From positions 279,230 to 343,229 of the IMG/VR virus record IMGVR_UViG_3300049001_000044: DNA of 64,000 bases; one strand, written 5' to 3'. Below are positions 60,898 through 64,000 of the stretch, in pieces; position 1 is the first letter of the stretch; each line of letters begins with the position of its first letter. Made by a program: the position numbers and the translations under genes. Below the pieces are notes generated by a model. It was given only the letters and a program-made list of their open reading frames with translations. It was not told where the DNA came from and ran no database searches.

Positions 60898-62904
60898 TTA
60901 CTTGGCAGTAGCTAGCACGAAGTCTTCGAAGTTTGCAGCAGGAGTTTCCAGCCACACCTTACGATCGTCTGCTCGAGAAGAGCTAAATGCCAGATCGATT
61001 GCGTTGCGGTCTTCGTCGTCTTCCATGTCAATCCTAAACAGGTAGTTGTCCATGTTCGACAGGTAGTGCGTGAACTCCGCTGCGGTCGAAGTACCCAATC
61101 CCTTATAGTACTTGTGAGACCAGCCCTTCGTCGTCTTGCCTTCAGTGTGTTCCCATTCCCTGAACTCGCGCTCAGTGAAGAACTCCAGAGTAGGTTTGCC
61201 CTTGATCGTGACCTTCACCAGTGGGGTACGGAAGATGTTGATGACACCCATTGCGAAGAGCTCAGGCCAGAACTTCTCGAAGAGATTCATGAGCAGACCA
61301 CAGATGTGTGCACCGTCAACGTCAGCATCAGTAGAGAATGCGACGCGACCGAAGCGAAGCTGACTAATGTCAGTGACAGGAACACCAATCTCCAATCCCA
61401 TGATCGTCAAGATCTTTTGGATCGTGTTCGGTTCTTTCTTCTTGTCCTTGTCATCCTTGGCAGCAGTCTTACCTTTCTTCTTCATGCCGAGAATCTCGAG
61501 CACTTCCTTTTCCCTCACGTTCAGAGGTTTGCCTTTCAAAGGCATCGAGCCAATGTACGGAGACTTGCCACGACCGGCTTGAACCGCTTTCGCTGCCGAA
61601 TCACCCTCAGTCAAGAACAAGATGCACTTGCTACGATCTTTCTTTTCGATCGCATCACTGAACTTGTCAACACGACGAGGATCAGCCTTGCTCATGTCCT
61701 TGATTGCGCCGCGAGCCAACTTCGCATCTTCAGCTGCTTGCTTTGCAGCAGCCCAGTCCAAGATGTTTTGGATGATTGGTAGCTTGATGACCTTGTTGAT
61801 GAACTTATCGGAGACTTCATACGACGTCTTGTAGTCTTTTACTTCCGTGATGAGGTCATCCTTGGTCTGCGAGGAATATCTTGGATTGACGATGGTCGCA
61901 TCAATGAACAACGTCATGTGCTGACGCAGCTCGGAAGGCTTGACATCCACCTTGTGCTTCTTCTTGATGTGTTCGCGAATACGTTCCCAGATCTGCATAC
62001 CCACATACAGAATGTGAGTGCCACCAATCTTAGTGCGAGTGGTGTTTACAAAGGAAACGTGTTGGAAGCCATCTTCAGAAGGAGCAACACCCACTTTGAA
62101 ATGCTGACCTTCATCGTAAGCGTAGTTGTCTTCGCCTACGAACATCTCGATGTAGTCTTTAAAGCTACGGGTAGGAATACGATCGCCGTTGAAGTAGACC
62201 TTGAGGTGCGTGTTACATGCTGCGATCTCTACAACACGCGCGAACAACATGTCAAAGTTGTCTTGATCAAGCGCGAAGGTACCATCGTCCAGTTGCATAC
62301 CCAGCTTTTCATAATCTGGTATGTAGCTGATCTTGGTGTAACCCTTACTGCCTTCTGCTGGAGTTACCTTTGGAGGATTCCGAGTTTGAGAATTGTCTTC
62401 AAACACCATCTTGAACTTCTTCTTCGAATCGCAGGTCTCAACCACAAACCGCGTAGAGAAGATATTGGTAAGACCAGCACCTTCACCATTCTGACCCGTC
62501 AAAGTGGATTCGTCTTCGTCATCGAAGTTCGAACCGGCCCGCAGTTCAAAAATCATTTCCGGTACGTACTGATTCTGCTCCTTGTGGATTACGACAGGAA
62601 TTCCGCCGTTATCGTAGATCGAAATCTCTCCGTTCTTCGGATCGACTTCCACCTTGATAATATCCAGATGCTTACCTTCTTCTCGTTTCGAGTGGTCAAC
62701 CGAATTACTTACCACTTCATCGAAGAGTTTGAGGAAGCCGGGATTGTAAGTAACGTTCCGCTTCAACATCGTCTTGCTCGAGGGATTAGGCATCCACTCT
62801 TCGCCTTCATGCGGTTTGACCGAGCCAATGTATCGGCCAGGTCGAAGTAAGACGTGCTCAACCTCATTCAGCTTTCGAAATTTTTGTTCGATAGATTTAG
62901 TCAT
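60898..62904 (-). CDS. Type II topoisomerase, GyrB/ParE-like subunit (uninterrupted gp39+gp60 equivalent)
   Basis: DEVVSNSVD, GQNGEG, LTEGDSA, PLKGK, DADVDG, YYKGLG; likely start MTKSIE. Confidence 0.95.
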   Translation of the reverse strand: MTKSIEQKFRKLNEVEHVLLRPGRYIGSVKPHEGEEWMPNPSSKTMLKRNVTYNPGFLKLFDEVVSNSVDHSKREEGKHLDIIKVEVDPKNGEISIYDNGGIPVVIHKEQNQYVPEMIFELRAGSNFDDEDESTLTGQNGEGAGLTNIFSTRFVVETCDSKKKFKMVFEDNSQTRNPPKVTPAEGSKGYTKISYIPDYEKLGMQLDDGTFALDQDNFDMLFARVVEIAACNTHLKVYFNGDRIPTRSFKDYIEMFVGEDNYAYDEGQHFKVGVAPSEDGFQHVSFVNTTRTKIGGTHILYVGMQIWERIREHIKKKHKVDVKPSELRQHMTLFIDATIVNPRYSSQTKDDLITEVKDYKTSYEVSDKFINKVIKLPIIQNILDWAAAKQAAEDAKLARGAIKDMSKADPRRVDKFSDAIEKKDRSKCILFLTEGDSAAKAVQAGRGKSPYIGSMPLKGKPLNVREKEVLEILGMKKKGKTAAKDDKDKKKEPNTIQKILTIMGLEIGVPVTDISQLRFGRVAFSTDADVDGAHICGLLMNLFEKFWPELFAMGVINIFRTPLVKVTIKGKPTLEFFTEREFREWEHTEGKTTKGWSHKYYKGLGTSTAAEFTHYLSNMDNYLFRIDMEDDEDRNAIDLAFSSSRADDRKVWLETPAANFEDFVLATAK

Positions 62905-62930
62905 ATTGTGCTCCACAAAAGTATGAGTAT

Positions 62931-62962
62931 ATTTTATTAGCAACAACTCATAGAAAAAACTG
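62931..62962 (-). promoter_or_regulatory. Early-type promoter CAGTTTTT-N18-TAAAAT
   Basis: Motif match with exact spacing. Confidence 0.65.
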
Positions 62963-63068
62963 CGAGTTGAGTTCCTACTTATAGTAGCATTGTACTCCAT
63001 AGTCCTGCCAACAAAAACTCAACTCAGACAGCTAAATATGCGTAAGATCATCTTCTCCTCCAACAAAA

Positions 63069-64000
63069 ATGAAAACATTCAAACAATTCCTCTCCGAAGC
63101 CGAGAACGCAGGATACCACTACGGCGATCTTCAGTATGGTAGAGACACCGCCCTCGGGCGAATGAGTGGCAGGTCGACAGGCCATTTCGGTACCGGCGTC
63201 TACTTCCTCTCTCAACCAATGTCAAACACAGGTCGCGACGATCGCCCCGTCAAGAAAGTCGATCTTAGTAAGTACCACCTCGCCAAACCTCGAGGAAAAT
63301 CCGGCGCAAAACAACTTCACGACGCCCTCAAGAAAATCAACTCACTCTTACATAATGAAGACAAAGATGAAGAACCACGCCTGATTAGAAAAGCCGCTTT
63401 CGAACTATGGTTGGCCCTCATGCCTGCGAACGAAGATAAGATCATCGACATTATTAAGAAGAGCTTGGAAGTTGTGCGTGCTAAGTACGACGTCGTAAGC
63501 CATACCTCCGAATACGCAGAGAGTTGCTCCACTCTCGTAATGAAAGAATTAGGATATGATGGAGTTGACGTCAGAGGAATTGACGGCTTTGACAACACCG
63601 ATTATGGCACAGTCATCTATGCGAGAGAACTATCGCAAGACGATCTTACTGAAGCAAAATTCGACAAGAATGTAGATGTTGAAGAACACGGCGACGGCTA
63701 TTACACCTTCACTGTCAACGGTAAGTTCTACCTCTGCAGCTTCTCTCCTGAGGAAAACGTTAGCAAATACGGTCCAAACTTTAGCTTCGGTCTCTACGAC
63801 GAAAAAGCGGAAGGTAGCGATATCTCAGTCACTGGTACGGGTAATGAATATGAAGTCTTCTCTACTGTAGTTAAGATCCTTCGCGATTGGATGGAGTTAA
63901 AGAAAGCTGACTTCCATTTCACTGCAGCGAAAGACGAACCTTCCCGCGTAAAGTTGTACGATAGAATGGTAAAGCGGCTGAAGTTGGTTGATGGTTGGAA
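63069..64000 (+). CDS. Putative head-packaged protein (3'-truncated): ADP-ribosyltransferase-like domain plus second domain
   Basis: Leader MKTFKQFLSE|A; GYHYG...GHFGTGVYF...LGYDGV...YGTVIY; LTEA junction; GCTAAATA 63031-63038; open to window end. Confidence 0.7.
   Translation, partial: MKTFKQFLSEAENAGYHYGDLQYGRDTALGRMSGRSTGHFGTGVYFLSQPMSNTGRDDRPVKKVDLSKYHLAKPRGKSGAKQLHDALKKINSLLHNEDKDEEPRLIRKAAFELWLALMPANEDKIIDIIKKSLEVVRAKYDVVSHTSEYAESCSTLVMKELGYDGVDVRGIDGFDNTDYGTVIYARELSQDDLTEAKFDKNVDVEEHGDGYYTFTVNGKFYLCSFSPEENVSKYGPNFSFGLYDEKAEGSDISVTGTGNEYEVFSTVVKILRDWMELKKADFHFTAAKDEPSRVKLYDRMVKRLKLVDGW

What the first reader, a model, noticed from the sequence alone, without database searches (positions are those of the whole stretch)
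63031..64000. Packaged ADP-ribosyltransferase-like protein with T4-style targeting leader
Seen: MKTFKQFLSE|A followed by YHYG...GHFGTGVYF...GYDGV...DNTDYGTVIY, then LTE|A and a second domain (TGTGNEYEVFSTV...SRVKLYDRM). Established: H-Y-class ART folds show YHG / FGxGxY motifs, and T4 injects the ART Alt. The usual catalytic Glu (ExVV) is not evident here, so the domain may be atypical, nucleic-acid-directed or inactive. It is transcribed divergently from topoisomerase II and is missing from the ORF track.
Basis: partly seen in the sequence, partly recalled or inferred. Interest (0 to 1): 0.6.

Follow-up and report, generated by a model that had tools for sequence, protein, structure and literature searches.

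The report
Capsid-targeted ART-like phage effector gene
A giant T4-like phage encodes a two-part protein with a T4-type "pack me into the head" leader; its first part belongs to a large uncatalogued family that looks like a distant cousin of the ADP-ribosyltransferases other phages inject into bacteria.

Summary
Window 63069-64000 (+) is a genuine gene. It has no stop in the window because the window ends at the end of a 343-kb phage record with a 127-bp terminal repeat. Read across that junction, the ORF is 330 aa.

The parts are:
- a 10-residue leader, MKTFKQFLSE|A, close to the T4 capsid-targeting sequence MKTYQEFIAE;
- a 185-aa N-module;
- a linker, LTE|A;
- a DUF6934 C-module.

The genome has a T4-type prohead protease and gp23/gp24 capsid genes. 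About 19 more ORFs carry the same leader, and about 18 carry a second type. A late-promoter-like CTAAATA lies 36 nt upstream of the start.

The N-module matches no Pfam, PHROG or NCBIfam model, yet it has 781 relatives among cluster representatives. Most sit inside giant polyvalent (injected) proteins, often directly after ART-PolyVal copies.

Packaging, cleavage and NAD+ chemistry are inferred, not shown. I rate it a new variant of a known kind, of moderate interest.

The parts
63032..63038 (+). CTAAATA, a T4-late-promoter-like motif 36 nt upstream of the ATG
   Evidence: The genome has 106 TAAATA sites. Of these, 35 lie 30-39 nt upstream of the start of an ORF of at least 60 aa, which is a sharp positional peak. 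This gene is one of them. Its promoter function is inferred.
63069..64000 (+). The gene as far as the window holds it: residues 1-310 of 330. The last 20 codons and the stop lie at record positions C1:128-188, beyond the 127-bp terminal repeat.
   Evidence: Homologues at E 1e-75.
63069..63098 (+). Leader or propeptide, residues 1-10 (MKTFKQFLSE), with predicted cleavage after Glu10
   Evidence: It resembles the T4 capsid-targeting sequence MKTYQEFIAE (PMC8442874). The same type of leader is on about 19 ORFs of this genome and on homologues P0004, P0005, P0011 and P0276.
63099..63653 (+). N-module, residues 11-195: an uncatalogued ART-like domain. Key residues are H17 (63117-63119), Y45 (63201-63203) and D164 (63558-63560). 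A three-helix insert spans residues 76-143.
   Evidence: AlphaFold2 model with pLDDT 92.6. Residue conservation. hhalign against ART-PolyVal, P 0.0012. Structure searches. No Pfam, PHROG or NCBIfam model matches.
63645..63656 (+). Inter-module linker L193-T-E195|A196, the predicted second prohead-protease site
   Evidence: This is one of only two [LI]xE sites in the 330 aa. Both are followed by Ala and both sit at module borders. Orthologue P0011 has ITE|A at the same place before a different C-module. The site aligns with the N-terminal LxE of stand-alone DUF6934 proteins.
63654..64000 (+). C-module, residues 196-310 of 196-330: a DUF6934-family domain (TGTGNE...EPSRVKLYDR)
   Evidence: PF22028 scores 23.9 bits against a cut-off of 27, but 51 of 56 aligned homologues match it. 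Stand-alone homologues of about 140 aa occur in large phages. The PA5oct homologue EST35_0349 is annotated as a structural protein by ESI-MS/MS.
63874..64000 (.). Copy of the record's 127-bp direct terminal repeat. This is the assembly junction that cuts the gene in the linear record.

Best explanation
This is a late-expressed, capsid-targeted cargo protein of a T4-like jumbo phage related to Ralstonia phage RsoM2USA and Xanthomonas phage XacN1.

Proposed mechanism; every step is inferred:
1. The 10-residue leader takes the precursor into the prohead core, as the T4 capsid-targeting sequence does for internal proteins.
2. The phage's T4-type prohead protease removes the leader after Glu10.
3. 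It probably also cuts after Glu195 (LTE|A). That would release two proteins that stay in the head and enter the host with the DNA.

The first product (residues 11-195) belongs to a large, unnamed domain family that is otherwise mostly embedded in giant polyvalent injected proteins. It is most likely a divergent sister of the H-Y-D ART-PolyVal ADP-ribosyltransferases, with H17, Y45 and D164 in the catalytic positions. It would use NAD+ to modify a host target early in infection.

The second product is a DUF6934 protein of unknown activity.
For: Leader and packaging:
- The gene, its motifs and its full length are established.
- The leader resembles the T4 capsid-targeting sequence.
- The genome has Peptidase_S77 and gp23/gp24.
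- About 19 type-A and about 18 type-B leader ORFs occur in the same genome. They include a Zeta-toxin-like kinase, an Amidoligase_2 protein, a weak ParB-nuclease match and an ART-PolyVal-like protein. These are domain types typical of polyvalent proteins (PMC5512222).
- Stand-alone N-module homologues mostly carry [LIV]xE just before the domain.
- A late-promoter-like motif sits at -36.
- The PA5oct DUF6934 homologue is a virion protein by mass spectrometry.
- The Vibrio phage D479 homologue starts MKTLQTYMVE|A.
- The [LI]TE|A linker is conserved in P0011 although its C-module differs.

ART relation:
- Of the best 150 profile hits, 104 are longer than 600 aa. Those scanned carry LPD38, ART-PolyVal, MuF_C and Sbno-type helicase domains. 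The module often follows ART-PolyVal copies directly.
- H17 is present in 66 of 67 sequences, Y45 in 67 of 67, and position 164 is D or E in 54 of 67.
- hhalign aligns YH, GxGxYF and LGYDG in order, with P 0.0012 and score 26.5. Thirty column shuffles reach at most 16.2.
- The top two viral-structure (BFVD) matches are ART-PolyVal proteins.
- The Atlas shape search lists ART-PolyVal and RES clusters.
- Eight of the top 50 PDB matches are ART folds.
Against: - No ART family model is matched at any threshold.
- hhalign probability is only 19%, and a reversed-alignment control reached score 22.1 over 33 columns.
- Position 164 is Asn in 10 of 67 members, while D167 and D175 are better conserved. 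The catalytic assignment is therefore uncertain.
- There are no virion proteomics, N-terminal sequence or RNA data for this phage.
- The ribosome-binding site is weak.
- The family was not found in four cultured relatives.
Confidence: 0.55

Rival explanations
1. The protein is packaged as described, but the N-module is not an ART. It would be an enzyme of a different, so far undescribed fold and chemistry that merely shares short motifs with ARTs.
Against: Three motifs are collinear with ART-PolyVal and the order of secondary structure is the same. ART-fold matches recur in three independent structure libraries. The module sits in tandem with ART-PolyVal copies.
Confidence: 0.2
2. The N-module has an ART fold but acts as an NAD+ hydrolase or phosphorylase, or degrades an NAD-derived signal, as RES/MbcT-type enzymes do. 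It would not transfer ADP-ribose to a macromolecule.
For: RES-type proteins (MbcT 6fkg, 8gug, 9r35, NatT 8qnl) are among the ART-fold matches, and a RES cluster appears in the Atlas search. Phage counter-measures against NAD-derived signals are discussed in PMC9503650 and PMC7824862.
Against: The sequence signature is nearer to ART-PolyVal (H-Y-D) than to the R-E-S pattern. The best viral matches are ART-PolyVal proteins.
Confidence: 0.12
3. The protein is not packaged. The leader-like N-terminus is only a shared paralogous feature (for example a translation or folding element), and the protein acts in the cytoplasm of the infected cell.
For: There is no proteomic or processing evidence for this phage. 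The family is absent from the cultured relatives that were searched.
Against: The leader resembles an experimentally defined T4 capsid-targeting sequence. The matching protease is present. A late-type promoter motif is present. A DUF6934 homologue is found in PA5oct virions. The family lives in polyvalent proteins predicted to be injected.
Confidence: 0.08
4. It is a catalytically dead module that serves as a structural or DNA-associated internal head protein.
For: Position 164 is variable. T4 internal proteins are often non-enzymatic (PMC3012670).
Against: About 25 invariant or near-invariant polar and glycine positions across 67 diverse sequences argue for an active site. Its acidic pI of about 5.9 is unlike the basic T4 internal proteins described in PMC8442874.
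Confidence: 0.05

Closest known systems
ART-PolyVal (Pfam PF18760; Tox-ART-HYD2 clade), the H-Y-D ADP-ribosyltransferases of phage and conjugative-element polyvalent proteins (Iyer et al. 2017, PMC5512222)
   Same: The order of motifs is the same: YH in strand 1, GxGxYF in strand 2, and LGYDG before the last strands. A variable insert sits at the same place. Both occur in the same giant proteins, often adjacent. The top viral structural matches are ART-PolyVal proteins.
   Different: The Pfam model does not detect it at any threshold. It has a distinct extended signature (YHxGD, R-S-T-G-H-F-G-T-G, DVR, DNTxYGSVIY) and a three-helix insert of about 70 residues. It lacks the helix that follows strand 2 in ART-PolyVal.
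[quoted passage not shown]
   Same: The N-terminal leader of about 10 residues has the form M-K-T-aromatic-x-x-F-[IL]-x-E|A. The cargo behind a conserved leader varies. The prohead protease of the same family is present (PMC3012670).
   Different: The cargo here is acidic and enzyme-like, and has two modules with a second predicted cleavage site. The repertoire is far larger, about 37 leader-bearing ORFs against three internal proteins in T4.
T4 Alt, the head-packaged and injected ADP-ribosyltransferase
   Same: The concept is the same: an NAD+-using modifier delivered with the DNA.
   Different: Alt is an R-S-E class ART (PMC5512222). The module here has an H-Y-D-type configuration and no detectable similarity to Alt.
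Polyvalent proteins (2-15 effector domains in one injected polypeptide)
   Same: The domain families are the same: this N-module, ART-PolyVal, Zeta-toxin kinase and ParB. The predicted role in early infection is the same.
   Different: In this phage the domains are encoded as separate small genes, each with its own leader. Here two modules are joined by a cleavable linker rather than fused into a giant protein.
Pseudomonas phage PA5oct EST35_0349 (QCG76230.1) and the KVP40-like Vibrio phage D479 protein VPHD479_0391, both stand-alone DUF6934 proteins
   Same: Homologous to the C-module, with 31-33% identity over the whole module in the alignment and 49% over the conserved core by tblastn. The PA5oct protein is in virions by ESI-MS/MS. 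The D479 protein has a leader like the T4 capsid-targeting sequence.
   Different: They are single-domain proteins of about 140 aa, not fused to an ART-like module.

Membership tests
ART-PolyVal (PF18760) | Match to the family model at or above its gathering score | tested here: not met
   No match even at E up to 10 for the query. None for any of the 67 aligned domain sequences at E up to 1.
ART-PolyVal / H-Y-[EDQ] ART class | His in strand 1, Tyr in strand 2 and an acidic residue in strand 5, in that order | tested here: met
   H17 lies in predicted strand 14-18, Y45 in strand 44-47, and D164 immediately before strand 165-166. Conservation is 66/67 for H17, 67/67 for Y45, and 54/67 for D or E at 164. 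These positions are collinear with ART-PolyVal in hhalign.
ART superfamily | ART fold shown by structure comparison | tested here: inconclusive
ART superfamily | Binds NAD+ and transfers ADP-ribose | not testable with these tools
   Needs biochemistry.
T4 Alt/ModA/ModB (R-S-E ARTs) | R-S-E catalytic motifs and sequence similarity to Alt | tested here: not met
   The Pfam scan found no ART-family match of any kind. The motifs present are of the H-Y-D type.
T4-type cargo carrying a capsid-targeting sequence (internal proteins) | N-terminal leader of about 10 residues like MKTYQEFIAE, ending in [LI]xE | tested here: met
   MKTFKQFLSE|A against the published sequence. The leader is shared by about 19 ORFs of the genome.
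T4-type cargo carrying a capsid-targeting sequence (internal proteins) | A gp21-family prohead protease encoded by the same phage | tested here: met
   PF03420 Peptidase_S77 scores 84.7 bits at C1:224671-225102. gp23 and gp24 homologues are present.
T4-type cargo carrying a capsid-targeting sequence (internal proteins) | Found in virions in processed form | not testable with these tools
   The only indirect evidence is that the PA5oct DUF6934 homologue is a virion protein.
DUF6934 (PF22028) | Match to the family model | tested here: inconclusive
   The query scores 23.9 bits against a cut-off of 27. However, 51 of 56 homologues recovered with its profile match PF22028.
Polyvalent proteins | Several unrelated effector domains in one large polypeptide | tested here: not met
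   The query has only two modules in 330 aa. Its N-module family is nevertheless mostly found in such proteins: 104 of the best 150 hits are longer than 600 aa.

The most novel reading that the evidence does not exclude
The N-module would define an unrecognised, widespread clade of NAD+-using ART-fold enzymes: at least 781 clusters at 50% identity and no Pfam, PHROG or NCBIfam model. Its active site would be elaborated beyond H-Y-D by invariant R35, H39, D167 and D175, and it might act on a target class other than proteins, such as nucleic acid or a signalling nucleotide.

This phage lineage would also have unbundled the polyvalent-protein arsenal into about 37 separately leader-tagged, protease-processed head cargo proteins, some of them joined pairwise by cleavable linkers with swappable modules.
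Probability: 0.3. Interest if true: 0.7.

Novelty: new variant of a known kind. Interest (0 to 1): 0.55.

Why it matters
Head-packaged ARTs and cargo carrying a capsid-targeting sequence are known from T4, and polyvalent proteins are predicted injected effectors. This gene links the two.

- A domain that is common in polyvalent proteins but absent from every family library appears here as a small, separately tagged gene. That makes it easy to express and assay.
- Showing NAD+-dependent activity would annotate hundreds of giant phage and plasmid proteins at once.
- The roughly 37 leader-tagged ORFs would give a ready list of candidate injected effectors for a whole group of jumbo phages that infect plant-associated bacteria.
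- The conserved [LI]TE|A linker with swapped C-modules suggests how such cargo is shuffled.

Tried and rejected
- A first AlphaFold2 run with an 8-sequence alignment gave a poor model of the conserved N-terminal part (pLDDT 69). It was replaced by a 67-sequence run.
- A combined alignment of both modules (A3) was misaligned by MAFFT, with C-module homologues laid over the N-module. It was not used.
- Foldseek against PDB gave nothing.
- The pdb_via second look was dominated by helical bundles matching the insert.
- PDB sequence-profile searches for both modules found nothing.
- NCBIfam found nothing.
- PHROGs matched only the C-module and the leader.
- tblastn against cultured phages found only the C-module.
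- The N-module profile found nothing in RsoM2USA, XacN1, RAS14 or Xoo-sp13. The positive control on the phage's own genome worked.
- A GNAT-like reading of the C-module, suggested by the TGTG loop and KLYDR helix, got no support from Pfam scans of 56 members and was dropped.
- No other genetic code was used.

Full report
**1. What is there**

The + strand frame opening at ATG 63069 runs without a stop to the window end. The window ends exactly at the end of virus record G000, which is 343,229 bp, rated 100% complete, and has direct terminal repeats. The last 127 bases equal the first 127.

Read across that assembly junction, the ORF continues at C1:128-188 and is 330 aa. The gene is intact. 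It is only cut by the way the record was linearised, which is why an ORF track that needs a stop codon missed it.

The divergent neighbour (60898-62904, -) is a topoisomerase II large subunit. The next gene across the junction is a GIY-YIG endonuclease.

**2. The phage**

The genome encodes a T4-type prohead protease (Peptidase_S77, 84.7 bits) and gp23/gp24-type capsid proteins. The major capsid protein is closest to Ralstonia phage RsoM2USA (67% identity). Next come Stenotrophomonas phages CM1 and RAS14 and Xanthomonas phages XacN1 and Xoo-sp13. GC content is 50%.

**3. Leader**

Residues 1-10 are MKTFKQFLSE, followed by Ala. [quoted passage not shown] It is cleaved off once by the prohead protease and is sufficient to encapsidate foreign proteins (PMC8442874; PMC3012670). 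The two share M1, K2, T3, F7 and E10, with Y/F and I/L conservative pairs.

The leader is not a one-off:
- About 19 ORFs of this genome start with M[RK][FT]FK..[YF][LI].E. Most are clustered at 162-183 kb.
- About 18 more start with MK[LV]x[EQ]LFE.
- Some of these carry a Zeta-toxin/AAA_33 kinase domain, an Amidoligase_2 domain, a weak ParB-nuclease match or an ART-PolyVal-like domain (28.4 bits). These domain types are typical of polyvalent injected proteins (PMC5512222).

Close homologues of the gene carry the same leader (P0004, P0005, P0011, P0276). More distant stand-alone homologues mostly have [LIV]xE a few residues before the domain.

A CTAAATA motif lies 36 nt upstream of the ATG. Of the 106 TAAATA sites in the genome, 35 lie 30-39 nt upstream of an ORF start. 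That is the behaviour of a T4-late-type promoter; the function is inferred.

**4. N-module (residues 11-195)**

It matches no Pfam, PHROG or NCBIfam model and no cultured phage by tblastn. Even so, a profile of it finds 781 cluster representatives at E up to 0.001, and 192 at E up to 1e-30.

Of the best 150 hits, 104 are longer than 600 aa. The six giant hits that I scanned are polyvalent proteins with LPD38, ART-PolyVal, MuF_C, Sbno-type helicase and methylase domains. In none of them does any Pfam model cover the stretch that matches my profile. In many hits the module follows ART-PolyVal copies directly.

Across 67 diverse sequences the following are invariant or nearly so: H17, G19, D20, R35, T37, G38, H39, G41, T42, G43, Y45, F46, R59, H84, L87, N91, T155, G162, G165, D167, V168, D175, G180 and V182. 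Position 164 is D in 33, E in 21 and N in 10.

With this alignment AlphaFold2 gives a confident model: pLDDT 92.6 and pTM 0.89. It has strands at 14-18, 44-47, 61-65, 165-166 and 181-183, and a three-helix insert at 76-143.

**5. Is it an ART?**

No single test is strong, but all point the same way.

(a) Iyer et al. define ART-PolyVal by His in strand 1, Tyr in strand 2 and Asp in strand 5. I built an ART-PolyVal alignment from the polyvalent proteins in hand. It shows vYHGT, GxGxYFT and GYDGvi. hhalign against the N-module profile aligns YH, GxGxYF and LGYDG in order over 145 columns, with score 26.5 and P 0.0012. Thirty column-shuffled controls reach at most 16.2. A reversed control reaches 22.1, but over only 33 columns.

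(b) Foldseek against viral models (BFVD) ranks two ART-PolyVal proteins first, at E 0.016-0.018 and probability 0.66-0.77.

(c) The Atlas shape search lists an ART-PolyVal cluster (TM 0.43) and a RES cluster (TM 0.39), after two clusters of viral hypothetical proteins (TM 0.68-0.69) that are probably members of the same family.

- MbcT, 6fkg;
- two RES toxins;
- NatT;
- SAIP;
- ParT;
- PARP2.

Weak points are the Asn at position 164 in 15% of members and the better conservation of D167 and D175.

**6. Linker and C-module**

The whole protein has only two [LI]xE sites, at residues 8-10 and 193-195. Both are followed by Ala and both sit at module borders.

The orthologue P0011 is 73% identical in the N-module and is followed by a GIY-YIG gene, as here. 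It has ITE|A at the same place, followed by an unrelated C-module with an HEVTH motif. P0004, from a contig with the same topoisomerase neighbour, ends right after the N-module.

The C-module belongs to DUF6934. The query itself is just below the cut-off, but 51 of 56 profile homologues match. Stand-alone DUF6934 proteins of about 140 aa occur in large phages and mostly begin MxLxELFD. Some have a longer leader of the T4 capsid-targeting type in front. In the alignment the query's LTEAKFD lies over that N-terminus.

The PA5oct member (EST35_0349) is annotated as a structural protein by ESI-MS/MS. The fold and function of the C-module remain unknown.

**7. Most likely mechanism (inferred)**

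1. Late transcription from the CTAAATA promoter.
2. The leader takes the precursor into the prohead core.
3. The Peptidase_S77 protease cuts after Glu10 and probably after Glu195.
4. The two mature modules remain in the head and are ejected with the DNA.
5. The ART-like module modifies a host target with NAD+ early in infection.

Shown here: the gene, the leader family, the protease gene, the family distribution and the predicted structure. Inferred: targeting, both cleavages, ejection, NAD+ chemistry and the target.

**8. Comparison and novelty**

The overall scheme is known from T4 (internal proteins, Alt), and ARTs are the commonest modifying domain of polyvalent proteins (PMC5512222, PMC9503650).

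What is new:
- the module family, which is large, uncatalogued and fails the ART-PolyVal model;
- its occurrence as a small gene tagged with a capsid-targeting-type leader;
- the cleavable two-module design with swappable partners;
- the size of the leader-tagged repertoire in this phage.

I rate it a new variant of a known kind.

**9. Limits**

- No expression or virion data could be obtained.
- The family was not found in four cultured relatives.
- Joining the ORF across the terminal repeat was done in a script, using the record's own overlapping ends. No letters were added or changed.
- The protein is a phage protein aimed at bacteria. No step needed referral.

Noticed in passing
G000:C1 about 162,000-183,000 (-), plus 30.5, 31.5 and 64.2 kb (-) and 253,072 (+); loci L009-L014: About 19 ORFs start with M[RK][FT]FK..[YF][LI].E. 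Pfam finds a Zeta-toxin/AAA_33 kinase (L011:1485-2201), Amidoligase_2 (L011:4045-5298) and a weak ParB-like nuclease match (L010:938-1738). Most have no family. This looks like a large set of capsid-targeted cargo genes.
   Followed up: partly
Window 10805 (-) (C1:290034), and about 17 further sites in G000 listed: A second N-terminal type, MK[LV]x[EQ]LFE[A], is found on about 18 ORFs, many of them behind a TAAATA motif. One of these (L013:636-1202, leader MKVKELFEE) is an ART-PolyVal-like protein at 28.4 bits. Stand-alone DUF6934 proteins elsewhere start with a similar MxLxELFD.
   Followed up: partly
Whole genome G000; in the window for example 63032-63038: TAAATA, usually preceded by A, G or C, shows a sharp peak 30-39 nt upstream of ORF starts: 35 of 106 sites. 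It is probably the late promoter of this phage group.
   Followed up: partly
L002:449-1303 (+) = C1:449-1303, just beyond the window end: A GIY-YIG / I-TevI-like homing endonuclease gene follows the gene. The same neighbour follows orthologue P0011 in L016.
   Followed up: partly
L016:92-1672 (P0011): This orthologue has the same leader, N-module and ITE|A linker, but its C-module is different: about 330 aa with an HEVTH motif (zincin-like?) and no Pfam match. This suggests module swapping behind a conserved cleavage site.
   Followed up: partly
L015:2947-3648 (P0276): In a related contig an extra 233-aa gene with the leader MKTFKQFINE lies between topoisomerase II and the N-module gene. It has LMRG and TTS motifs reminiscent of R-S-E ARTs, but no Pfam match. 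The genome's own ORFs at C1:30535 and C1:31536 (-) have similar F/L-[WF]-RGM motifs.
   Followed up: no
Window 62905-63000 (-): The mechanical ORF for topoisomerase II starts 32 codons upstream of the likely true start (MTKSIEQKF, ATG at 62904). The real intergenic region is therefore about 164 bp.
   Followed up: no
   Followed up: no
L006:516-3591 (-) (C1 about 219.8-222.9 kb): The head-gene block holds a gp22-like scaffold (290 aa, rich in LxE), the major capsid protein (405 aa, N-terminal YLKE|TAEAG, a possible maturation site) and a 270-aa ORF with an MKLLQELQ start.
   Followed up: no
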